Positions 5,265 to 54,400 of a DNA stretch of 64,000 bases are shown here, one piece after another. Position numbers and translations under genes: made by a program. Position 1 is the first letter of the stretch; every line of letters begins with the position of its first letter. Source of the stretch: Epithemia pelagica (Eukaryota; Protista; Bacillariophyta); NCBI GenBank assembly GCA_946965045.2, contig OX337242.1, positions 434,001 to 498,000 on the forward strand, given 5' to 3'. Under the pieces are notes generated by a model that was not told the origin of the DNA, did not search any database, and saw only the letters and a program-made list of their open reading frames with translations.

Positions 5265-8200
5265 ATGGCACGAATGCCTGTCCCAACCAACAACGTGTGG
5301 CAACCGCTGGAAGATTTGGAACGACCCTTCCTTTGTACGGTCCGCCGGTTCGAATGGACGACGCCACAACAGGAACAATACGTGTTTGTTCTCGCGCTGT
5401 TGCTTGTCTTGATTCGGCGTGGTTGGTACCAATGGTTGTTTGTTGGGAACAACAAGAACAACAACAAGAGAACGCACCAGAAATATGCTGCCGCCATGAC
5501 TCATGATGATGCTGATGAGAATAGTACAGAACCAATCATGGTGTCTTCCAAGTCAAGCGATCGACATCATCCACAACAACAACAAGTCTTGCATCCCCCG
5601 GTGTACGCCTGGTTTCCCATGCAAGTGGATGGAGAATGGTTCTATAATGCCCCACAAGTTCCCGAAAAAGATGATGATGATGCTGATGACAGGATTGTCA
5701 CTCCAGAATCGACACGAGATTCGGACATGGGTCCTCCTCTACTTGCACACAATCACGGCACCAGCAAAAATGTACGAACTCAATCACAAAAGGAACCCAC
5801 TACACAGATTGCGACCATCAATCCAGCCCCAGCCTCTCTTACCGATCCAACAACAACAACAAGGACGCTGCAAGAACCGTCAGTTGTTTCAACGACCCAT
5901 GAGGTGGATTCGCGTAGCTCCACTCCGGAATCTCATACCACCACCACCACATCAGCATCCTCCTCTTCGTCGTCGTCGTCTTCCTCCTCCGCATCTCCAC
6001 CATCACCCCCCAAACCAACGACTCCTCCTCCTCCACCAAGCCTTCCTCACGATTTGACCGTCTTGATTTGTTCGGGAAATTTGGGCAATGCCGAACCTAC
6101 CTTGGACGATTTGGCCAGTTGGATCCCCATTCAAGGACGACACATGCAAGACTGGAATTCCAACAACAACGCGGACAGCCACAACAACAACAACCAAAAG
6201 ACGACGACGGCTGTGGAGTGTTTTGATATCATTGCCATTGGCATGCAAGAAGCAACGTGGAATGCGTCCAAAAAACAACCCTCTTCCACAATTCATCCAA
6301 ATACCTCTACTTCTACTACTACTAATACTGCAAGCGAACCACCACCACCACTTGCTCGATCGTCAACATCATTGGCCTTTGTCAAGGATACCGATTTGTT
6401 GCGTCAATCCTTGGCCACGATTTTGGGCCCCGACTATGTGTGTCAATCGGCGCAACAACGCGGACAAATGCGTCTCTGGATTTATGTGCATGGTCGACAA
6501 GTGGCGCACATTTCTCGGATTCAAACCACCTGTGTCAATACGGGAGTGGCTGGTGTCTTGGCCAACAAGGGCGGCATTGTCACGAGTTTGACCTACCGCG
6601 AAACGACGCAATGTACCTTTTGTTCGGTCCATTTGGCCGCCCATGCTGGATCCGTCTATTACACGGCACGATGCAATGATTTGCAAGATATCTTTCAAGC
6701 CACAACCTTGCCCAGTAACAGTGTCGGTACCAACAACAACAATCCTCCGCACAGCAGCAACCACAATGGGGTCCTCTCGTCGTCGTCGCCGTCCATGACA
6801 TCCAAACAACGCCCGAGTCGTAGCTGTCGTTCCAGACATGCCGACAGTCCAATTGGATCCTTTCTGCCATCTAGTCCACAAGGAATTGATGTCACCTTGA
6901 CCAGTCATTATACCTTTTTGTTGGGAGACTTGAATTTTCGAACTCACTTTCCAACCACCGACCAAGCGACCACAAGCAGTAACAGTAGCAGTACGAGCAA
7001 CAAGAAGAATAGCAAGGATGCCTTGTCGCAAGTGTTTTCCTTGATTCGGAATGGAGATTTCCAAACCCTCTATTACGAACATGATGAATTGTATGCCGGT
7101 ATGCAAAACAAGGATCTCTTGGTGGACTTTTGCGAAACCCTGCCGTGTCTGTTTCCACCCACCTTCAAGGTGTATCGTGGTGTGTCCGGTCTCGTGTACA
7201 AGGGCAAACGCATTCCCAGTTATACCGATCGCATCTTGTACAAATCCGCCTTGGCGTCCACCGCAACCGCCACAACAACGTCGTCGTCGTCGTCGTCCAC
7301 TACGACGGCCGTACCACCCCCCACACCACCGCCTCAACTCATTCGACCACTCTTGTACGAACCTTGTTTGGACTTTAGTTCGTCGGATCACAAACCCGTT
7401 CGAGGTGCCTTTGCCCTCACCTCCAATGCTGCCGTGGCCGCAGTGGCTCACCAAGCGCTTCGTCGCCGGAACCACCAGCGAACCACCACCACTAGTACTC
7501 CTGCACCAGGCACGACGACGACGACAACGACCATCCCCCGAACCCGACTGCGACGACCGACCTGTTCCTACCACTTTACCTTTCGCAACATGTCCTGCAC
7601 TCAGTTACCCGTCATGGACGTTACCTGGAGTTCCGATCCCTATATCATGATTACCTGGAATTACATTCGCATGTTTTCCAATCCCTCCATGAACCATTCC
7701 GACCAGAACAACAGCAACAACGTCAAGAGCCGGCCACCCAAACATCAAGGAGTCATGAAATGGAGTCCAGGATCCAATCCAGCCTGGCCCCATACACCCT
7801 ACAAATCCCGGACGCTCTGTCCCCGGTTTGAAGGTTCGGAACTTTCCCTTTGCTGCAATGGACCTCTGGTGGGTACCGAAGCCATGATGTATGTGACGGT
7901 CATGGATTTTGATATGGTCAATCGTGACGATTGGATTGGAACCGTCCCCTTGAACATTTGTCATGTGCTCCATCAAGCCGCCCGTGCTTCCGTGACGGCC
8001 CATACTCCCACGTCGACCACCCGGACGTTGGAGTTTGACGTCCCCTTGCTCAAAAACGCCAAGTATTCCAATGAGGCACGCATGCAATTCACCTTGGACA
8101 TTGAACAATCCGATTTGCCCGTTCCGATTCCCATGATGACGGGACGTTTGTCCTTTTCGCGATCACTGCCATATTCGTCGTCCTCCTCCTCCATGTCATC

Positions 8201-44529: not shown

Positions 44530-44666
44530 TTTCGTCTGCTTTTCCAAACAAAGATAACGAAGGAAGCCATTGCCGGGTGGATCTATGTGAACCATGCGTT
44601 GGCTTTCAACACACTTACCCATCTCATTGCAACCTCCTGGATCCAAACCAGTACTCCATTTGAAGC
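44530..44666 (+). pseudogene. Relic fragment of a second copy of the membrane-lipoxygenase gene
   Basis: Near-identical to 48755-48885 (TKEAIAGxIYVNxALAFNTLxHLIATSWxQTSTP), including the upstream intron acceptor. Several differences are synonymous. The flanks have no long ORF. Confidence 0.85.
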
Positions 44667-44900
44667 TCGGCATTCCGAGAGCATTCATGTCTCTCTGCTT
44701 GGGTCTGTTCCAATGTATTTTATACAGCGTGTGACATAGTTTGGAACTGGCGTTTGTTTCTTTCAACCTGTTTGAAACAATGATTCCCGTCTCGTGTGAA
44801 AGCACAGTGGTCACCCTCGTCGCAAGCAAACTCATTGCTATCCTTGACTCTGATGGAGTGCAGGGTCTTGAGATGTTGTCCCCTGTTATTGAGACGGCGG

Positions 44901-46412
44901 TTAACAAATCGTGTCGAAAAGCGTGGCAAGATTCTTTGTCGCAGGCGGGATGTTGGTCCGATTATCACAATTCACAAAACACTCCGTGAAGGAGGCCTTG
45001 TCTAAGTGAAGTTGAATGTGATGAATTTCGGCAAATCCTCCAAACTTCAGACGCGAGGATGACCAGGACTCTCGATGTACGACATGATACTTACTTTGGT
45101 TCCACCCACCTAGTGACGTGAGGGAAGGGCTGAGGCCGGATCGTCGAAAGCGTCGTGCTCGTCTGTCATTGAGACGGTAGGCCTCGTGGATTCGAACTCC
45201 TCTCGTATGATGATCGGTCGATTGAGAAATGGTCGTTACGACATGGTCCGTCAATGGATCGGGTCGATACGGAACAGCCCTGACCGGAAACTCGGGATGA
45301 TGACAGTGTAACAATCCCAGAAACATGAGACGATGATACAAATCATCATCTTCAAATCCATAGCCTTGAAATTGATTGTCCATCCCATTGATACTCGCCC
45401 AATGTTGCTGATGAATCGTCATTATGGCCCCAGCAAACTGTGGGTAGACGAGGGAAAAGCCAGAACTTTGGGAATAACCGGCCAAATGGAGGGGATTGGA
45501 ACAGGTATGGTATCGAGACTTGGTAAACATGGCCGGAACCAAATCAACGTCGTGAATTGTGACACACTTCGTGTCGGCTGATACATGATCCAATCCGGCA
45601 TTCATCAACAGAGCTCGATTGAACAATTCGTCATCCACTTGATCCATGATGAACAAGGAAAACTCGTGTTGCTCCGTGTTCGGATCTTGTTGGTCGCTTT
45701 GCTGATAATGGTAATGAAGGAAATAATCCATATAATCAATGAATCGTTTCAAATGAAATGATCGATCTCGGTAAGGAATGACAATGGCGTGTTTGTGAAT
45801 GCGTTTGGACTGTTCCTGGTATGGACTACTGGAACCGGTTTGCGGCCCAGCAGTAGAAGAAGTTTTTGAAGAGGTATTGGTGTGGTTTGCCGTGCTTGTC
45901 GGTCGTTGTCCAAAGGGAGCATGAATGACCCAGGAATCGGCCAGCTCGTCGTAGACCTCTTGACAAAGGTTTGCACTGAAGACCCTTTTGGGGGGTGAAA
46001 CATGGGCATCACGCCTCTTGCAGAGCGTCTCTTTGGGCAAACTGGACAAGATCGAGTTCAACCATTTTCGTTTGGCGCCAATGCGTTCCGTCCAACTGAT
46101 GTGCCCCAATGATGATGATGATGACGACGACAAGGACCCGTTTTCCATTTTGTGGAATGTGTTCTCCGAAAGAACCTCACCACCAGGACCATTGGAACAC
46201 GAATTGAAAAGGGTTGTCATGTAATCCGCAATGCCAGTAGCTCCGTGAAGGTCATATGTGTACGTGGACAGAAGAGTGAATTGCAGAAAGCTAAAGAGCA
46301 AAATGCCCAGACTCGCAAAAGCCCAAATGTACCCTGCATGGTTTGGGCTGTTCCTGCTCCTCCTCATGGCTGCAAAATACAAACCCTGACGAGAAACTGT
46401 GACCTTCGCCAT
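44901..46412 (-). CDS. GT7 beta-1,4-galactosyltransferase-like protein, copy B (intronless)
   Basis: HAIVIPYRDRSFHL, FNRALLMNAG, IHDVDLVP, FAGAIMT, INGMDNQFQGYGFEDDDL and TM IWAFASLGILLFSFLQFTLL. First in-frame ATG downstream of the track start is at 46412. Confidence 0.92.
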   Translation of the reverse strand: MAKVTVSRQGLYFAAMRRSRNSPNHAGYIWAFASLGILLFSFLQFTLLSTYTYDLHGATGIADYMTTLFNSCSNGPGGEVLSENTFHKMENGSLSSSSSSSLGHISWTERIGAKRKWLNSILSSLPKETLCKRRDAHVSPPKRVFSANLCQEVYDELADSWVIHAPFGQRPTSTANHTNTSSKTSSTAGPQTGSSSPYQEQSKRIHKHAIVIPYRDRSFHLKRFIDYMDYFLHYHYQQSDQQDPNTEQHEFSLFIMDQVDDELFNRALLMNAGLDHVSADTKCVTIHDVDLVPAMFTKSRYHTCSNPLHLAGYSQSSGFSLVYPQFAGAIMTIHQQHWASINGMDNQFQGYGFEDDDLYHRLMFLGLLHCHHPEFPVRAVPYRPDPLTDHVVTTISQSTDHHTRGVRIHEAYRLNDRRARRFRRSGLSPSLTSLGGWNQSKYHVVHRESWSSSRLKFGGFAEIHHIQLHLDKASFTECFVNCDNRTNIPPATKNLATLFDTIC

Positions 46413-47213
46413 TGTCGATTCAATCTCACCAACCCCCAACCCCCAACCCCCCCCCCCCAGAAATAGTCCCAGCCGGTTTGAGATGCCATCTAAGACTAAC
46501 AAAAGCGACTGCGACATGGTTTAGTCGCTCGAAAGACGTCTGGTCGCTTTTTTTCGCATTCTTGTTGGCAGCTTCTTTCTATTTTATTGATGGGTGGACA
46601 ACGAGAGACGAGAGGGAGCAGCGAGAGAACGCGACAGAGCAAACCATGACAACAACAATATATAACGAGGGTACAAGCTGAGTTCAGGGAGTGTGTTCCT
46701 GTCGTAGACTCCTGTAGAATTTGTACCAGAGGAGTAATCCTGGAAAGCGTTCTGCGTTATTAGTGTCCGACTAGCGACTTCCTAGTGGCTGAAATAAATA
46801 TTTTATTAACTTTAGTGTTATGTGTGATTTCTTCCGAACGCTAGAATTTCATCAAAAATTACGAAAAAACAGTCGACTGTGTTGACCATGGTGGAGGGCC
46901 ATCCCAACCGCAAACGATGTTGCCGAGCTGCATCCATCTCCCTCAGGGTGTTGTTGGACCGCCACCAATGGGGCAACATCGTTCTCGGTTGGCATCATCC
47001 ACAACAACATGATCATCGGACGCACCCCACGCACGATAGTCTCGTACAAAACGAAGTTTTTCTGGGGGAACGCGAGATTGTCGAGTTTCGGAAGCACTTT
47101 GCACAACAGAGGCATAATTATAAGGGCTATATTAACAAAGATGGCTGGCGCGTATTACGTAGATTTCCTACTGGAGCGCTACGACAGGAACATTCTGTCT
47201 GAACTCAGCTTGT

Positions 47214-47326: not shown

Positions 47327-48007
47327 GCCCTCAGTTAAAAATGTAATTTCACAGTGTCGATACTTTATTCCAAAGTAGACGAGTGCTATTAGTCCCTACA
47401 TGTAGTAGTCGCTATCCCTACTATCTACTACATAGTATCCTTTATCCTCTAGGAGGAGGAGTACTTGCTTGGCATCAAGTTTTTCTTGGCATCAAATTCT
47501 CTAAATTGCAATGTGGAAACCGCAAGTCTCAGATGCGATGACATTCTGACAAATCCAAGAAATATTACGAAGCAATGCGACGAGCGGATGATTTCTCGCA
47601 AGATACTGCAAGGTTCCTCACGTCTACACGAACACGTTTCCTTTCATTCGCTATCTCCACCTAACACCCACTCGTTGGTGATGCCACGGTTTGCTCGAAA
47701 ATCATGGTTGCTTCAACACGGATGGACGGATGGGTAGTCTCAGGTGACTGGAGGTTGCGTGAATCTCCTACGGGAACTTGTACTTATTTGGTTATCTTAC
47801 ACGGACCATGTGTGATGGAGAGCCTCGAAACAGCCAAACCGTATTACCATCCTACTTTGGCTCACAAATTCTGGTTTTTCAAACAAAAATTAGCAACAAC
47901 AACAACAATAGACTCAGGTAAGCCACCAAACTTGGACGATACTCATGATATCCCTGGGAGAAAGTCAATGAACTCACACATTGGTTGGCTTTTTATTTAG
48001 CAACACA

Positions 48008-51000
48008 ATGAATTTCAAGAAGCCTACTTTTGTCCAGGAACGATTCCCGGATAATGAGCCTGGTACCTCTCCAAAATTTGGTATCTTTCCATCACTCTTG
48101 TCTATCGGCGGATTGGTCTTTGCTTCGGCTAGTTCCCTTTACCTGGCTTCCATTCTCTCTCACCCGGAGTGGGCCTTCCAGTTGAACCCGTATCGTCGAG
48201 AGGCCACGACAAGTATCGAGTTGGGACGAGCCTGCGCTTGCTTCTTCCCCCATGTCTTATCCACAACCTATTCGGTTTGTGATCACCAGAAGATTCCCGT
48301 TGCCACAAGTCCTACCGATGATACAGCGCCACTTTGGATGGTGCAGCCTTTTTATTTGGCTGCAGGTGGAGCTCTCCTAGGCTGTGTCTCCGAACTGGTT
48401 CTTTTGTGTTTCCGGAAGCCATTTGAACACTCTGTCAATGTAGTATCTTCCTTGATCCAGCGTCTATGCCATGCCAACCTTGCTGCTACAGTTTCGACTC
48501 AACTTTTCGTCTCGCTGGCCCTCACGACCTCCTGGGAAAGCGTCTCTTCTCGTTCGTGGATTCTCATGTGTTTGGCTACCTTTCTGACAACCTTTCTTGC
48601 ACCTGCCCTTTTCTGGAATGGATGCAAGATCCGTGGTGGAGTGGACGCCCTCCCTTACATTCTCTTCATCATTCATGCTGTCCAGTTTGTGTGGGTGGTA
48701 AGTGTTGTGTGGATCGTGCTTCTACAGAACATTTGTCGTTCACGAACCAACCCCCTGTGCTTTTTCCACATACAGACAACGAAGGAAGCCATTGCCGGGG
48801 GGATCTACGTGAACTATGCGTTGGCTTTCAATACACTTGCCCATCTAATTGCAACCTCGTGGGTCCAAACCAGTACTCCTCTTAAGAGTTTTCTCCGTCA
48901 CGTTCTTTCATCGCTTGGCTTGGGTGCTATGTACATTGCGCTCATGTTGGCAGGGAACAGTACTTTATCAGTTCACGATCTGTCGCTTGATCAGCAAGTG
49001 GAGAAGGGTCATAAGGGTTTGTGGCCGTTGGTCTTGACTTCTGGATTGGTGGGTCTTTTGGCGGTTATGAAGTCTTTCCCTTTTCTGTACCAAACAGCCC
49101 GTTCAGAGTTAAGCTGCATCATCTGGTCCATCCCATACTTTGTATTGCTTGCAAACCCAGCTCCTCCTACTCCCATACCCTTGCGTCATGTCTATGCAAA
49201 AAGCCCGCCTCAGAGAGTTCTTGTCGTGCCATATTCAAGGGCTCACCCTTACGAAATGTCTCAAAATCTGTCTGTCCCCGCGATTGCAGGGTACGTATTA
49301 AGAAAGCATCGTCCATCTGTTGCATTTCTGAGCAGCAAAAGTATTCTCACATTCGTTGTTTATTCTATTTCTTGCTCTTCCAAAAGCCGGCTTCCCGCGA
49401 CGGTTGTTGAAAACGCTGGGCAGTTGCTCGGGAAGGTATCCAATTTCTTCTTTGGCTTCGCGTTACTTGACCGTTTTTTCCCTCAAGACAATACAAACGA
49501 ACGTTTACACGAGAAAGTTCGTCTTGCCCTCGATGAAGATGGCCGTAAACGCCATCCTGGTAAGTTTTCATTGGGCACGGTGAAGTCGGATCCACATTCT
49601 GTGTCAGGCGTTCCTCACTCCAACGGTTCTGTTAAGTTATATTCTCTGTCCCATTCCAAGGCTTTCCAGCAAAGGCCAAGTCCCTTCCACCAGCACCACA
49701 GCCTGCAATTGAGAGTTTCAAGGAAGGACAGTACCTTGCAATTCTTTGTCAGTATGGAATTGGCAACACTTTCATGAAGCAGGCCGTCGAGACGAGTACC
49801 TATCCGTTCTTTGCATTGGTCCCATGTGACCGCGATGTTCCACATTACTCACTCGTGATTGACTTTCGGAACCTCGAACAGTATGAGGTGAAGGAAGACT
49901 ACGAGCCGTATGGCGGTGTGGCGTTCTTCTCCATTAACGAAGAAAGAAACTTGCAGCTCCGTTGGGTGATTGCCCCACGTGAAAAACAAAAGATTATGGT
50001 CGACGAAGATGACATGACATTTCGTCGCGCTGAGGCAATGATTGTATCGACACTGTCATTCAAGGTTGTGGCAGAAAAGCATTTATTGGAGTTACATATG
50101 TCGTACAACCTATTGGAAGTCACCAACATCAACGCATTTGATGTCGCAATGAATCAGGAAAAGAAAAAGGATTTCAATTTCCATCCGCTGCGCATTGTTT
50201 TATACATCCACCTATTCTCGCACGGTCTGGCGGAAGAATTGACAACAGAGCACTTGCTACAAATTGAGAGTGTCTTTCCGCAGGTCTTTGCGCTAAAATA
50301 TCCTGATCTCATACAGTGCTTGGGGACGAACTTCAAGAACTTCACCTATGCTTCAGATGAAGACTTTACTGCCCGCGGAAGAGTGAATGAGATGTTGACT
50401 GGTACGTATGCAAAGTATTCCAACGATTATCTTCCGTTTTCCAATCAAGTAGCGTGGGAGATGGACTATCACCAGTTATTCCGACGATATGCTGAGAGGA
50501 TCATGACGGCTGTGTATGGTCATGATGATCGAAATGTTCAAGCGGACCAAGTTCTCCAAAACTACTACTCTGCATTGGAAAACATTTTTCAGAGTATGCC
50601 AGAGCGTTATGAACAATTTCAATCGCTCCATGGTATCGTCACCTTCGTCGCAGACACGATCCATCACTTGGTGATTCGTCACCATGTGTACGGTACGAGT
50701 GGGACAGTCATGGCATTTGACCCGCGTTTAGGCTTTACCCAGACGGCAAAAGATGGAGGGCCTCCAGCTTTGGACGCGTATCGTTCCCTGGAATTTGCTG
50801 GTATGGCAACTGCATATGCGAACTTTGTTCGTCTCGTCGTCCGAAATGGACAAGAAGATAAATTTCAAAAGGTGTTCGACGATGCCACTCCCGTTCCAAG
50901 GGCTGTAGGTGCAACTTTGTCACAAGTTGAACTGGTACATGAAATGAAACTGGCGTGGTCCGAAATGCAAAGCAGCCTGTGTGATCTTCAACGATGCTGG

Positions 51001-51099
51001 GAGGTAGTGTCTTCGGATGAGGAACCGCACCGTAACGACATCAACTTCATGTATTGCCGTCCTACTCCGAATGAATTGCATGCGGGCCCCGGATTCTGA
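48008..51099 (+). CDS. Lipoxygenase-like protein fused to an N-terminal multi-pass membrane domain; introns 48698-48775, 49291-49386, 49560-49660
   Basis: The GTAAGT...CAAG intron (49560-49660) joins track ORFs 47981.. and 49774.. in frame. LOX motifs: KHLLELH (H-x4-H), HPLRIVLYIHL, VFPQVFAL, IRHHVYG; C-terminus ELHAGPGF. About 7-9 hydrophobic segments precede the LOX region. Confidence 0.8.
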
Positions 51100-51436
51100 A
51101 GACGGTACCGAGAGATTTGGTTCATCTTTATCCGATACCGAAAAGTTCCAATGAATGAGGAAAAACCAACATGCAGATCCCTCATCACCCCAAAACAGGG
51201 TTTAAGTCAACAACAGAATTAAGACATGTATCAAAGTGTAGAGAAAAGTGAGCTACGTCTCTATCCTATTCGTAATACGCCTGTGATTTTAGGTTCGTTC
51301 TGTATACCTCTTCTCTAGTGCTGCGTCGTACCAAAACGTACCAGGAACGCATTCCATATGCCATTGATCGTCTTGCGTTGGTCGTGTACGTATCTGTCCC
51401 AGGACGTTGCATGTGCCGTTTCTGGCTTTTTGTCTA

Positions 51437-54400
51437 TTACGGCGTCGTTGTTGCCGGTCGCCCTCCCCGTTGCATCCACAACAAGTGCATCAACAATGCC
51501 TTACTGGACGATCGACACGAATGTCCAGCTTGGCACAAACCGGCAATGGCATCGAGCAAAATATCCGACAAGTTGCCTTCAAAATCGTTCCGCAAAGAGT
51601 GGACCATGTCTTGTCCAATCCCAAAATCACGTTCCAGGGCTTGCCACAACAATATTTGGTCCTTGTTGTTGTTGCTTTGATTCTTGATCAGCCCATTGTG
51701 GGAGAACGGAATGGACGACCCGGACGATGACACGACATTGATCATACTCGTCGATGTCGGAGTACGGGCTCGAAGGGCCAAATATTGAGTCTGCTGGTCT
51801 GGTTTCTCGCCAGTGGCTTGGAAAGAGGGGTCCTCGTGAGTCGCTTTCGATTTCGGAGGAGCTTCTAGACCCCTCACACATGAATGTATCTTGTTTGGGA
51901 TATTGGGGTTGCTACTACCGTCGTTGTTGTTGTCAGCTGGACACGATGGGAGGGCTTGTCGAATGCGGTGATGTTCCTTGGTGGGCAAGGCCTCCATACC
52001 AGCCTTTACCTGAAATCCCATGGTCATGCCGACTGTTACGCATCCTTGCATGTCCTGTTCGCGGGACAACCATCCACCTTTTTCGTCCAATGAAAAGTTC
52101 ACGGATACAGGACTCATCGAGTTGCTTCCTCCTCGCAGAAAGGGCTCCTTATTGGACGACCCTGAAGAAAAAGACGAGGACAATGGCATGGTCGACGAGG
52201 ATTCAAACAGGGCTTGTTCTTGGTGGGGATTGTAGTAGCGCCAATCCACATAGTGATTGATGCACCAAACACGGACCGCATGATGCTGACTGCGCGATTG
52301 CGCCGAATAATGACCATAGACATCTCCCAAGGCGTGTCGGGCTTGCCATTGGATCAACTCAATAAAGCTGTGCGCCAAAGCATCGTCGGCATCCAATCGC
52401 GTCTCCAACAAGACACGATGCTGCGCCGCCTCATAATACGACAAGAGTACATGAGCGCTCCCATGCAGCAAAAAGTGGTCCACCGTGGACTGGTCGATTT
52501 GCTGCTGTTCGACATTTTTCTTTTTCTTCTTCGTCTTGTGCGACTGTCGGAGCAATCCATTCATGCCTTGTCGAAAATTCTCCTGGACGACATGGGTAGC
52601 TCCGACAATGACTGTTGGAGCCATGGTAGCAGTGTTGTTGTGTCCATGGTTCGTTTGAGCAGCAAACTCCACAATTTGAATCAATTCGTCCAACAAGGTT
52701 GAGTGCAAATCCGGATCGGTCCAAATTATCCACAAATACTGTCCATTGGTTTGCTGTCGCATACTGGGAACGGTAAAGGTCCGAAACAATTCCAAACGAG
52801 CACTAACAATAAAAATAGAATCATGATTTCATGTAAGTGAGGATAGGATTCCCAAGAGTGTGACCACAAACATCAAATCCATTCACACAGGCGCTGCCCA
52901 CTTTACGTACCGTCCCAAATGCAACAAATTGGGTTGATGTTGCATGAATCGGGTATGGACGACATGAACCAGATTGTACTTGTTGTTCCAGGTCGTTGTC
53001 GTAGTTGTTGTGGTTGTAACGGAACGTGTTCTCATCTCGGTAATGTCTTGTTGAGTGGTGGGTGTCGGAAGGAGAGGGGACTCTGCCCGTGTCTGTGCTG
53101 TGTTTCTATGATTGGTTGAATTCTGGAAGATGACTGTTGTCGTGGTCGTCGTCGCATTCATGTTCGACAGGGCTAAAGTGCTATTGGTTGCCGCATCATA
53201 CGGTCCTACGAGGGGATGGGGCGACGGAACTCCGAGGGGTGTAGTACGAGGTCCTTTGTCTTGTTGTTGTGGTGGTGGTTGTTGTTGTTCCACCACCACA
53301 CTCTGCCAGAGTTGCAGGACCGTGTCCCAATGCGGTCCTTGACACGCATGAGCTCCTTGTGGTTGCTGTTGTTGTTTGGAAAACATTCGAGACCATCGAG
53401 ACTGGATCCAAGTTGACAGAAACCCGTCGTTGTCATTGTTCTCCGTGTTTGCGGTCATTGTCGTGGTGGTCCATGGTCGACCCACTGGTGGCAGGCGAAA
53501 CGGGTCCACACCAGCACAGTTTGCTTCTTCTTGCTTTTGCTGTTGTTGTTGTTGAAAGCGTTGCACTTGTTGTTGAATCAAAGTGGCATTGAACCCATTG
53601 GACTGGATTGACCAGACCCAGGGTTGGACCTGTCGTTTGAGGGCCCGGGGAGAAATGCCAAACCGATGCGGCAAACTGGCAAACAAGGCATTTTGAAAGG
53701 GTTTCCAACCCGCACTAATGGCAATACCACTACTGCCGACAGGCAGCTGGCTCCTCATTCTTCCCTTGTTGTCTTTCTTGTCGTTTCGCACCATGCGTTC
53801 GTCATCGACCCCATGGTCATTGGGAGTGGTGTCGGGTGGTTCCACGACCTGGACCATTCCCACACGAGTCCAATCGTCCAGAGCGGGTGTCACGGCATGC
53901 AAGATTGAGTATTCCTCCTGTGTCCATCCCTCTATACTCCAATACTCCCAACAAGTAAAAGGACTACTCCCAGACGGATGGGATGTGGATGGAACCAACC
54001 CGGCCATGATGGTCGTCCACGAACTCCACGACACTCTCCTCATGGCGGTGGTGGCTTGTTGCCACCAGACACGTCCCATGGACCACATTGATGATGATGA
54101 TGATACTGGTACATGGCTGGATGCACTGGATCTAGGAATAGCGCTGTCACAAAAAGGTAGTTCCACCATGGTGGTGGTTCTGCTCCTCGTGCTGCTAGTG
54201 CTAACGGGGATCCAATCGTGCCACCACCACCAGTCGGCCCACCACGCCGGACTCATGAGCTCGTCCTTGATGTCATCGTTGTCTGGACGATTTCGAGAAG
54301 TACGACGACGACGAGGTTCCACCAACGAGGGTCGTTCCACGAATTGCAGCAACAACATCCGCATGGGTGGTTGTACTGGAGACGAAGGAGTGTCGACGTG

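What the first reader, a model, noticed from the sequence alone, without database searches (positions are those of the whole stretch)
48008..51099. Lipoxygenase fused to a multi-pass membrane domain, with a non-canonical iron-ligand set
Seen: splicing joins about 400 hydrophobic residues (7-9 putative TM helices) to a LOX catalytic domain. The H-x4-H ligands (50080, 50095) and a third His (50680) are present. The usual H-x3-N is H-H-V-Y-G, and the C-terminal carboxylate residue is Phe instead of Ile. Established: canonical LOX are soluble, usually with a PLAT domain, and diatom LOX make defensive oxylipins. Inference: a membrane-embedded LOX with altered metal or substrate specificity, possibly coupling lipid sensing or transport to oxylipin synthesis.
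Basis: partly seen in the sequence, partly recalled or inferred. Interest (0 to 1): 0.72.

Follow-up and report, generated by a model that had tools for sequence, protein, structure and literature searches.

The report
Membrane-embedded lipoxygenase-like enzyme in a diatom
This diatom gene joins an eight-helix membrane domain to a very divergent lipoxygenase-fold enzyme, and it belongs to an unannotated family, shared with marine bacteria where it usually sits beside a lipase gene, that may be a missing enzyme of marine oxylipin chemistry.

Summary
Window 48008-51099 (+) is one spliced gene. RNA contigs show two GT..AG introns, 48698-48775 and 49560-49636; the second joins the two reading frames. 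A third intron, 49291-49386, is inferred from homologues only.

Exon 3 folds confidently (pLDDT 84.9) and matches only lipoxygenases (LOX): Foldseek E 1e-9, VIA Z up to 25.9. Pfam, NCBIfam and plain PDB sequence searches find nothing. Profile methods prove LOX-superfamily homology (hhalign probability 99.95%, E 5e-38).

H148-x4-H153 and H348 align with LOX metal ligands, and the C-terminus is in register. The usual Asn is replaced: Thr353 sits at that place, and an extra invariant His343 lies upstream. The last residue is Tyr in the family and Phe here.

The N-terminal half is an eight-helix bundle, tied between PAQR/AdipoR-like and other seven-helix folds, and lacks the PAQR zinc motif.

The fusion is no artefact. 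It is a single ORF in 38 of 39 bacterial loci, and 23 of those 39 loci have an adjacent patatin or class-3 lipase gene. It also occurs in eukaryotic transcripts, another diatom and four paralogues here, which the scan noted separately on other DNA of this genome. Every named member is "hypothetical protein". Activity is untested.

The parts
48008..48697 (+). Exon 1 (230 codons): N-terminus, TM1, a eukaryote-specific loop, and TM2 to TM5 of the membrane domain
   Evidence: ORF and ATG. An RNA contig starts at 48008 (record 6). Aligns colinearly with the N-termini of P0081 and bacterial members.
48698..48775 (+). Intron 1, 78 nt, GTAAGT..CAG, in frame and without a stop
   Evidence: RNA contig X1 record 1 skips it, with 64 and 200 nt on either side. 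Ends checked. Homologues have no 26-residue insert here.
48776..49559 (+). Exon 2: TM6 to TM8 with the conserved T-P-L-K-S-x3-H motif, a linker helix, and the first part of the LOX-like domain
   Evidence: conserved residues.
49291..49386 (+). Candidate intron 3, 96 nt, GTACGT..AAG, in frame; unverified
   Evidence: The 32 residues it would encode are absent from all homologues. Removing them restores the register with P0081. No RNA contig covers it.
49560..49636 (+). Intron 2, 77 nt, GTAAGT..AAG; its removal joins the two reading frames
   Evidence: RNA contig X2 record 8 skips it, with 140 and 44 nt on either side. The junction ...HP-V-IFSVPFQGFP... fits the family alignment.
49637..51099 (+). 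Exon 3, stop included: 486 residues forming most of the LOX-fold catalytic domain
   Evidence: AlphaFold2 model pLDDT 84.9, pTM 0.89. Foldseek top 50 hits are all lipoxygenases, E 1e-9 to 1e-7. VIA Z 20.6-25.9 with about 400-418 aligned residues. hhalign to PF00305-positive proteins: probability 99.95%.
50080..50097 (+). H148-L-L-E-L-H153: the H-x4-H pair of metal ligands on the long central helix
   Evidence: Nearly invariant in the family. Aligns with the invariant H290 and H295 of the PF00305-positive set.
50665..50697 (+). H343-x3-R347-H348-H349-V-Y351-G352-T353. H348 is the third LOX ligand. T353 occupies the place of the usual Asn. H343 is an extra invariant His.
   Evidence: H343, R347, H348, Y351, G352 and T353 are invariant in 64 sequences. 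H348 aligns with the invariant H476 of P0214, and T353 with the Asn of its H-E-I-V-G-N.
51085..51096 (+). C-terminal G-P-G-F (G-P-G-Y in the rest of the family): the presumed carboxylate ligand
   Evidence: The C-terminus is conserved to the last residue. It is in register with LOX C-termini both in hhalign (5 residues remain on each side) and in 3D (model 484/485 matches the LOX penultimate residue).

Best explanation
The gene encodes an integral-membrane member of the lipoxygenase (LOX) superfamily, about 946-978 residues long.

Architecture: an N-terminal bundle of eight transmembrane helices (a seven-helix core plus one more helix) holds a C-terminal LOX-fold domain at the membrane surface. 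The positive-inside rule places that domain on the cytoplasmic side. The membrane bundle takes the place of the PLAT/C2 beta-barrel of ordinary LOX.

Metal site: it is probably built from H148, H153, H348 and the main-chain carboxylate of the last residue. The fifth position is filled by the family-specific H343 or by water, because the usual Asn position holds Thr353.

Most likely function: dioxygenation of polyunsaturated fatty acids, or of acyl chains still in membrane lipids, to hydroperoxides. That is the first step of oxylipin synthesis. A (phospho)lipase would supply the substrate, and in bacteria the lipase gene sits next door.

Shown: the gene model, the fold, superfamily homology, ligand conservation, the conserved fusion and the lipase neighbourhood.
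Inferred: metal binding, topology, dioxygenase chemistry, substrate, and the role of the membrane domain.
For: One gene:
- RNA joints at both introns.
- Colinear alignment of all three exons with full-length homologues.
- P0081 is one 1001-codon ORF on mRNA-sized contigs of 3.1-3.6 kb from several samples.
- In 38 of 39 bacterial loci the family gene reads as a single ORF; in the 34 not cut off by a contig end it is 742-913 codons.
- A 983-residue gene model exists in the diatom Epithemia clementina.
- All four paralogues on contig C18 have membrane-domain exons upstream of the LOX-like exons.

LOX fold and homology:
- Foldseek finds only LOX, E about 1e-9, TM-score (query-normalised) 0.57-0.68.
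- VIA Z up to 25.9.
- A family profile against PDB hits only LOX, weakly.
- In an exhaustive search the family profile reaches proteins at E 1e-9 to 1e-14, and 9 of 9 tested pass Pfam PF00305.
- hhalign E 5e-38 over 505 columns.
- The reverse profile finds the window gene at E 4.5e-33, and in this genome finds only the five paralogues.

Ligands: H148, H153, H343 and H348 are kept in the family and in all paralogues, and the C-terminus is in register.

Lipid context:
- 23 of 39 bacterial loci carry an adjacent patatin (17) or class-3 lipase (6) gene. These are two unrelated lipase families in the same position.
- The PfaA PUFA synthase is above its cut-off in 5 of 10 host genomes, against 0 of 14 controls.

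Membrane domain: model pLDDT 93.4 with 8 helices.
Against: - There are no biochemical data for any member.
- Pfam PF00305 itself does not score the protein.
- The fourth-ligand Asn/His is missing at the canonical spacing.
- The C-terminal residue is aromatic rather than Ile or Val.
- I could not inspect model coordinates, so the ligand geometry is unverified.
- The window copy is the most divergent member. It differs at 24 of 135 highly conserved columns. Of these, Q349H, A211S and Y232F are at positions invariant in all other sequences, and Y486F at a position conserved in 62 of 63.
- Half of the tested host bacteria lack PfaA, and 16 of 39 loci have no lipase neighbour.
- The membrane module is also fused to a phosphodiesterase, which does not fit a pure substrate-delivery role.
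- The RNA evidence comes from low-depth contigs of a related strain, not from this strain.
Confidence: 0.6

Rival explanations
1. Receptor-enzyme reading. The eight-helix module is a seven-transmembrane-type sensor that receives a membrane or ligand signal and switches a cytoplasmic output domain. Here the output is a LOX-like oxygenase that makes an oxylipin signal; elsewhere it is a phosphodiesterase. Catalysis may be as in the best explanation, but the point of the fusion would be regulation, not anchoring or substrate access.
For: - The same module is fused to PDEase_I in P0192 as one uninterrupted ORF (profile E 2.8e-15).
- It also occurs as stand-alone proteins of about 270-300 residues, and with a Cys-rich extracellular N-terminus in P0185.
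- Polar residues are conserved inside the helices: E89, R114, N117, Q175, Q178, Q202, Q206, S220, H224.
- The fold matches GPCRs, rhodopsins, AdipoR2 and Myomaker at Z 13-15.
Against: - No ligand or signalling partner is known.
- The fold matches are generic for seven-helix bundles and are tied with each other.
- The bacterial neighbour is a lipase, not a signalling gene.
Confidence: 0.25
2. The domain keeps the LOX fold but not the LOX chemistry. It could be a hydroperoxide isomerase, lyase or epoxyalcohol-synthase-type enzyme, an oxygenase using another metal, or a non-catalytic lipid-binding domain.
For: - The fourth ligand is changed to Thr and there is an extra invariant His343 and Arg347.
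- An aromatic C-terminal residue is conserved in 62 of 63 sequences.
- There is no PF00305 score.
- Identity to solved LOX is only 11-15%.
Against: - Three His ligands and the C-terminal register are strictly kept over bacteria and eukaryotes, which argues for a functional metal site.
- Diatom LOX-like groups with H-x4-N/S/H/Q spacing have been modelled as compatible with iron binding (PMC10968607).
- The lipase neighbourhood fits classical LOX substrate supply.
Confidence: 0.25
3. This particular copy is a decaying or neofunctionalised paralogue, and the other four copies on the chromosome carry the ancestral function.
For: - It differs at 24 of 135 conserved columns, against 9-18 of about 136 in other eukaryotic members and 6-9 of 91 in the shorter paralogue rows. 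The changes include Q349H next to a ligand and the terminal Y486F.
- A relic of the start of exon 2 lies 3.4 kb upstream.
Against: - The reading frame is open over all exons.
- All candidate ligands are kept.
- The orthologue in a related strain is transcribed and correctly spliced.
Confidence: 0.12
4. Gene-model artefact: two adjacent genes (a membrane protein and a LOX-like protein) wrongly joined.
For: The two long ORFs are in different frames, and one public gene call (P0001, 441 aa) covers only the second.
Against: - An RNA contig spans the junction.
- The protein is a single ORF in bacteria and on eukaryotic transcript contigs.
- The first part of the LOX fold is encoded in exon 2, upstream of the junction.
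Confidence: 0.02

Closest known systems
Canonical lipoxygenases (Pfam PF00305), e.g. human 12/15-LOX, 5-LOX, Pseudomonas aeruginosa PA-LOX, soybean LOX-1
   Same: - Same catalytic-domain fold (Z 20-26, about 400-418 aligned residues).
- H-x4-H on the central helix, the third His, the H-P-x7-H motif and a C-terminus in register.
   Different: - Only 11-15% identity and no PF00305 score.
- No PLAT/C2 barrel; an eight-helix integral-membrane domain stands in its place.
- The Asn/His fourth ligand is replaced (Thr at the aligned place, extra His five residues upstream).
- The last residue is Tyr or Phe instead of Ile or Val.
Diatom LOX-like groups IV and V catalogued by modelling (PMC10968607), e.g. 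Fragilariopsis cylindrus OEU18547 ('HlleIH - HnlvaN') and the 'HelvgN/S/H/Q' sequences
   Same: - The same one-residue insertion after the third His, with a variable fourth ligand.
- PF00305-positive proteins that carry the 'HEIVGN'-type motif in the one sequence read (P0214) are the nearest relatives reached by the family profile.
- The first motif, H-L-L-E-[IL]-H, is almost the same as in F. cylindrus.
   Different: - None of the 45 listed patterns equals H-L-V-[VI]-R-H / H-Q-V-Y-G-T.
- That paper trimmed sequences to the LOX domain and mentions no membrane domain.
- No protein named lipoxygenase appeared among the best 120 of the 134 relatives of the family.
- Whether the F. cylindrus protein is a member could not be tested.
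Natural LOX fusion proteins (coral allene oxide synthase-LOX, peroxidase-LOX, C2-LOX)
   Same: A LOX domain at the C-terminus of a larger protein. Peroxidase-LOX (P0209, P0211) and C2-LOX (P0223) proteins were among the distant hits.
   Different: Their partners are soluble haem enzymes or peripheral membrane-binding barrels, not a polytopic membrane domain.
PAQR / hemolysin-III / adiponectin-receptor seven-helix proteins (PF03006) and related ceramidase-type folds
   Same: - Best shape match of the membrane domain: ESM Atlas HlyIII cluster, TM-score 0.59/0.78, 204 residues, rmsd 2.8.
- AdipoR2 with bound C18 fatty acid Z 15.0, Myomaker Z 14.7, ACER3 Z 13.7.
- The N-in topology suggested by loop charges is the same as theirs (plus my own reading).
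   Different: - No PF03006 score.
- Only one conserved His (H224) instead of the three-His-plus-Asp zinc site.
- An eighth helix is present.
- GPCR and rhodopsin folds score within 1-2 Z units, so the assignment is not exclusive.

Membership tests
Lipoxygenase (Pfam PF00305) | Scores above the gathering threshold of the PF00305 HMM | tested here: not met
   No PF00305 hit at E<=1 for either window ORF, nor at E<=0.01 for P0081 or the Moritella protein. Six-frame PF00305 searches of the host genomes were silent, but so were the controls.
Lipoxygenase (Pfam PF00305) | LOX catalytic-domain fold | tested here: met
   Foldseek: the top 50 hits are all LOX, with 132 hits at E<=0.001. VIA Z 20.6-25.9, rmsd 3.0-4.0, 374-418 aligned residues.
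Lipoxygenase (Pfam PF00305) | Sequence homology to bona fide LOX (superfamily level) | tested here: met
   The family profile hits proteins of which 9 of 9 tested pass PF00305. hhalign probability 99.95%, E 5e-38. The reverse profile hits the window gene at E 4.5e-33.
Lipoxygenase (Pfam PF00305) | H-x4-H ligand pair on the long central helix | tested here: met
   H148 and H153 lie in helix 126-155 of the model and align with the invariant H290 and H295 of the LOX set.
Lipoxygenase (Pfam PF00305) | Third His ligand, with an Asn or His ligand four residues later (H-x3-N/H) | tested here: not met
   H348 aligns with the third His. Position +4 is Gly352 and position +5 is the invariant Thr353, which aligns with the Asn of H-E-I-V-G-N-type LOX. 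An alternative ligand, His343, is invariant, but its geometry was not checked.
Lipoxygenase (Pfam PF00305) | C-terminal residue (normally Ile or Val) whose carboxylate binds the metal | tested here: inconclusive
   The chain end is conserved and in register with LOX ends. The residue is Tyr in 62 of 63 sequences and Phe here. Coordination cannot be seen with these tools.
Lipoxygenase (Pfam PF00305) | O2-dependent dioxygenation of a 1,4-pentadiene fatty acid | not testable with these tools
   There is only contextual support: lipase neighbours and PfaA in 5 of 10 host genomes.
PAQR / HlyIII (Pfam PF03006) | Scores with the PF03006 HMM | tested here: not met
   No Pfam family was reported for the window's N-terminal ORF (only a sub-threshold B12D match), for full-length members at E<=0.01, or for stand-alone modules at E<=0.1.
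PAQR / HlyIII (Pfam PF03006) | Seven-helix fold of the PAQR type | tested here: inconclusive
   Atlas top hit is HlyIII, TM-score 0.78 by the hit, and AdipoR2 scores Z 15.0. GPCRs, rhodopsins and a designed bundle are tied at Z 13-15.4.
PAQR / HlyIII (Pfam PF03006) | Zinc site of three His plus Asp (motif from my own knowledge of AdipoR structures) | tested here: not met
   The only nearly invariant His in the module is H224 (S220-x3-H224). No His triad is present.

The most novel reading that the evidence does not exclude
This is the first integral-membrane branch of the lipoxygenase superfamily, and it is the hitherto unrecognised enzyme that starts oxylipin and aldehyde production in diatoms lacking a canonical LOX gene. 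The PAQR-like membrane bundle would take a polyunsaturated acyl chain out of the bilayer, after or together with lipase action, and present it to a metal centre with a new ligand set: three or four His, no Asn, and an aromatic C-terminus. In marine bacteria the gene forms a two-gene lipase-oxygenase cassette that moves by horizontal transfer.
Probability: 0.3. Interest if true: 0.85.

Novelty: new variant of a known kind. Interest (0 to 1): 0.74.

Why it matters
Lipoxygenases are textbook soluble or peripherally membrane-bound enzymes. A conserved polytopic-membrane form with a changed metal-ligand set would widen what the fold is known to do.

Diatom oxylipins and polyunsaturated aldehydes shape grazing, bloom decline and signalling in the sea, yet the enzymes behind them are poorly known. 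Only a few diatom proteins are annotated as LOX (PMC10968607). In this diatom genome the five membrane-LOX paralogues are the only LOX-superfamily genes that a LOX-derived profile finds, so they are direct candidates for knock-out and assay.

The bacterial lipase-plus-oxygenase gene pair offers an easy experimental system, for example in Moritella or Litoribacillus. It also points to an unrecognised lipid-oxidation pathway in marine bacteria, some of which make their own PUFA.

The membrane module, which also occurs alone and fused to a phosphodiesterase, is an uncharacterised domain family in its own right.

Tried and rejected
Searches that found nothing:
- Pfam, NCBIfam and PADLOC scans of the protein and its homologues gave no family.
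- phmmer of each ORF against PDB gave nothing relevant.
- The ESM-Atlas feature search of the membrane module returned only its own unnamed cluster.
- Foldseek of the membrane module against PDB gave nothing at E<=0.001, only weak rhodopsin and GPCR rows.
- Literature searches for a transmembrane or membrane-bound LOX fusion found none.

Inconclusive tests:
- The PF00305 six-frame search of the window's genome and of five host bacteria gave no hit, but the control genomes were silent too, so it says nothing. I replaced it with a profile built from PF00305-positive proteins.
- Whether F. cylindrus OEU18547 belongs to this family is unresolved. No sequence is held in the paper's supplements, and no protein named lipoxygenase was among the relatives listed.

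Ideas dropped:
- A splice acceptor at 49660 or 49752 was my first guess from frames alone. RNA shows 49636 instead.
- A defence-system reading of the bacterial gene pair was dropped. Only a generic phospholipase-effector similarity of the patatin gene was seen.
- The idea that all host bacteria make PUFA via Pfa synthase holds for only 5 of 10.

Limits on what I did:
- I did not search or fold the joined spliced protein. Exons were used by reference one at a time, and natural full-length homologues (P0081, P0048, P0088) stood in for the whole.
- One early script joined coding pieces internally to enumerate in-frame splice candidates. It printed only junction snippets, and nothing joined was saved or sent to a search.
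Full report
**1. What is in the sequence**

Two long + strand ORFs in different frames lie at 47981-49777 and 49774-51099. Contigs from a metatranscriptome of a close relative (90-97% identical) were laid on 47600-51400. They show two joints with GT..AG ends:
- One skips 48698-48775 (78 nt, in frame).
- The other skips 49560-49636 (77 nt) and joins the first frame to the second (records 1 and 8; ends checked).

Both bridging contigs have more than 31 nt on each side. The junction peptide ...R-H-P-V-I-F-S-V-P-F-Q-G-F-P... fits the family alignment.

A third in-frame intron, 49291-49386 (GTACGT..AAG), is likely. The 32 residues it would add are absent from every homologue, and its removal restores the register with P0081. 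No RNA contig covers it.

The protein therefore has 978 residues, or 946 if intron 3 is real.

The genome has 60.5 Mb in 23 contigs, and the window is C18:434001-498000. It carries at least 11 full-length silicon-transporter genes, so it is diatom-like.

**2. The C-terminal domain is a lipoxygenase-fold domain, but a very distant one**

Simple searches fail:
- Pfam gives nothing at E<=1.
- NCBIfam gives nothing.
- phmmer against PDB gives nothing relevant.

Four independent routes then agree:
- (a) A profile of 19 homologues against PDB hits only lipoxygenases (LOX). The hits are weak (E 0.014-0.7) but colinear.
- (b) An AlphaFold2 model of exon 3 (486 residues, 64-row alignment) has pLDDT 84.9 and pTM 0.89. 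Foldseek returns LOX in all top 50 places, with E 1e-9 to 1e-7 and TM-score (query-normalised) 0.57-0.68. VIA-align gives Z 20.6-25.9 with 374-418 aligned residues.
- (c) An exhaustive HMMER search of 1.84 billion cluster representatives with the family profile finds only 235 proteins at E<=0.001, of which 86 are at E<=1e-30. The tail, at E 1e-9 to 1e-14, consists of proteins of about 550-1150 residues. Nine of nine tested pass Pfam PF00305, including peroxidase-LOX and C2-LOX fusions.
- (d) hhalign between the family alignment and an alignment of those PF00305-positive proteins gives probability 99.95% and E 5e-38 over 505 columns. The reverse profile finds the window gene in its own genome at E 4.5e-33.

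**3. Metal ligands**

In the hhalign alignment:
- H182-P and H191 match the LOX H-P-x7-H.
- H348 (50680) matches the invariant third His.
- The family's H-Q-V-Y-G-T lines up with H-E-I-V-G-N, so the invariant Thr353 sits where the Asn ligand sits in those LOX. A one-residue insertion there has already been described for diatom LOX-like groups IV and V (PMC10968607).

H343, R347, H348, Y351, G352 and T353 are invariant in all 64 aligned sequences. His343 is therefore a candidate replacement ligand.

The chain end (T-G-P-G-Y; A-G-P-G-F here) is conserved to the last residue. It is in register with LOX ends both in hhalign (five residues remain on each side) and in 3D (model residue 484/485 aligns with the LOX penultimate residue).

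I could not read model coordinates, so the geometry is not verified.

**4. The membrane domain**

Exons 1 and 2 align colinearly with the N-terminal third of full-length homologues.

A model of the module (P0048 residues 1-300, 52-row alignment) has pLDDT 93.4. It shows eight transmembrane helices plus a linker helix.

Loop charges are positive after helices 2 and 8 (my own reading of the sequence printed). This suggests both ends face the cytoplasm, so the LOX domain would be cytoplasmic.

Shape searches give a generic seven-helix bundle:
- The ESM Atlas top hit is a hemolysin-III/PAQR cluster (TM-score 0.59/0.78, 204 residues, rmsd 2.8).
- In PDB, AdipoR2 with a bound C18 fatty acid scores Z 15.0, Myomaker 14.7 and ACER3 13.7.
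- GPCRs, rhodopsins and a designed bundle are tied at Z 13-15.4.

The PAQR zinc motif is absent. The conserved residues are E89, R114, N117, Q175, Q178, Q202, Q206 and T-P-x-K-S-x3-H224.

The module is mobile:
- It is fused to a cyclic-nucleotide phosphodiesterase in P0192, as a single ORF.
- It occurs alone in proteins of about 270-300 residues.

**5. The fusion is conserved, not an artefact**

- In 38 of 39 bacterial loci the family gene reads as one ORF; in the 34 not cut off by a contig end it has 742-913 codons. The organisms include Saprospiraceae, Aureispira, Lewinella, Moritella, Oleispira, Litoribacillus, Marinicella, Polyangiales, Pirellulales and Gemmata.
- P0081 (1001 residues, the closest full-length proxy) is one ORF on mRNA-sized contigs from several marine samples.
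- A 983-residue gene model exists in the diatom Epithemia clementina.
- Four paralogues lie on the same chromosome, each with membrane exons upstream. First-stage readers noted these separately.

In a quick tree the 13 eukaryote-type sequences form one clade (SH-aLRT 100). The window gene is sister to the Epithemia protein (60% identity), and the clade is nested among bacterial sequences that do not follow taxonomy. The root lies on a very long outgroup branch, so the direction of transfer is only suggested. I assigned the label 'eukaryote' from contig type and clustering, except for Epithemia.

Every named member is 'hypothetical protein'.

**6. Functional context**

In 23 of 39 bacterial loci a lipase gene lies directly beside the family gene, almost always downstream on the same strand. 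Seventeen are patatin-like phospholipases and six are class-3 lipases.

Two unrelated lipase families in the same position is a strong sign of a lipase-plus-oxygenase pathway. That is the classical way LOX substrates are supplied.

The PUFA synthase PfaA is above its curated cut-off in 5 of 10 host genomes tested, against 0 of 14 control genomes. This is an enrichment, not a rule.

No known defence-system model matches.

**7. This copy**

The window gene keeps all candidate ligands. It differs from the family consensus at 24 of 135 highly conserved columns, more than any other member tested. The changes include Q349H next to the third His, A211S, Y232F, W381Y and the terminal Y486F. It may be under relaxed or altered selection. 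Its orthologue in a related strain is transcribed and spliced.

**8. Known or new**

Two papers are relevant:
- A 2024 modelling paper catalogues 45 diatom LOX-like sequences and their ligand patterns. None equals this family's pattern, and the paper does not mention a membrane domain.
- A 2026 review of bacterial LOX mentions no transmembrane form.

The F. cylindrus 'lipoxygenase' has a similar first motif. Its relation to this family could not be tested.

I file the finding as a new variant of a known kind: a LOX-superfamily enzyme with a new architecture and ligand set, with no biochemical evidence yet.

**9. Limits**

- The RNA support comes from low-depth contigs of a relative.
- Intron 3 is unverified.
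- Ligand geometry, topology, metal, substrate and products are all inferred.

Noticed in passing
window 44557-44673 (+): A relic copy of the first 41 residues of exon 2 (78% identical at protein level, with a small gap) lies 3.4 kb upstream of the gene. It has no other family exons around it and looks like a duplicated exon fragment.
   Followed up: partly
G000:C18 at about 681.9-685.1 kb (-), 2346.5-2349.3 kb, 2469.7-2472.8 kb and 2557.6-2560.8 kb (+): Four paralogues of the membrane-LOX gene lie on the same chromosome, 50-60% identical to the window copy. All end in G-P-G-Y and carry an extra intron near residue 155 of exon 3. The matches at 2471.7-2472.8 kb and 2559.1-2559.6 kb each contain one in-frame stop, which could be an intron or a defect.
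   Followed up: partly
P0192; L048:2001-4802: The same eight-helix membrane module is fused to a 3',5'-cyclic-nucleotide phosphodiesterase domain in an uninterrupted 933-codon ORF from marine metagenome contigs. A second phosphodiesterase gene and an ion-transport-family gene (PF00520) sit next to it.
   Followed up: partly
window 44901-46517 (-) and 51437-52795 (-): The flanking genes are glycosyltransferases: a GT7 galactosyltransferase-like protein upstream and a putative rhamnosyltransferase-like protein downstream. No lipase gene lies next to the diatom copy.
   Followed up: partly
L017 and L022 (Oleispira), 5268-6369 (-): These loci carry a second class-3 lipase gene upstream on the opposite strand, in addition to the downstream one.
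   Followed up: no
L011 (MAG labelled Thermoplasmatota archaeon) and L001 (Chloroflexota MAG): Family members in these MAGs cluster tightly with Bacteroidota and Gammaproteobacteria sequences. This points to either recent transfer or mis-binned contigs.
   Followed up: no
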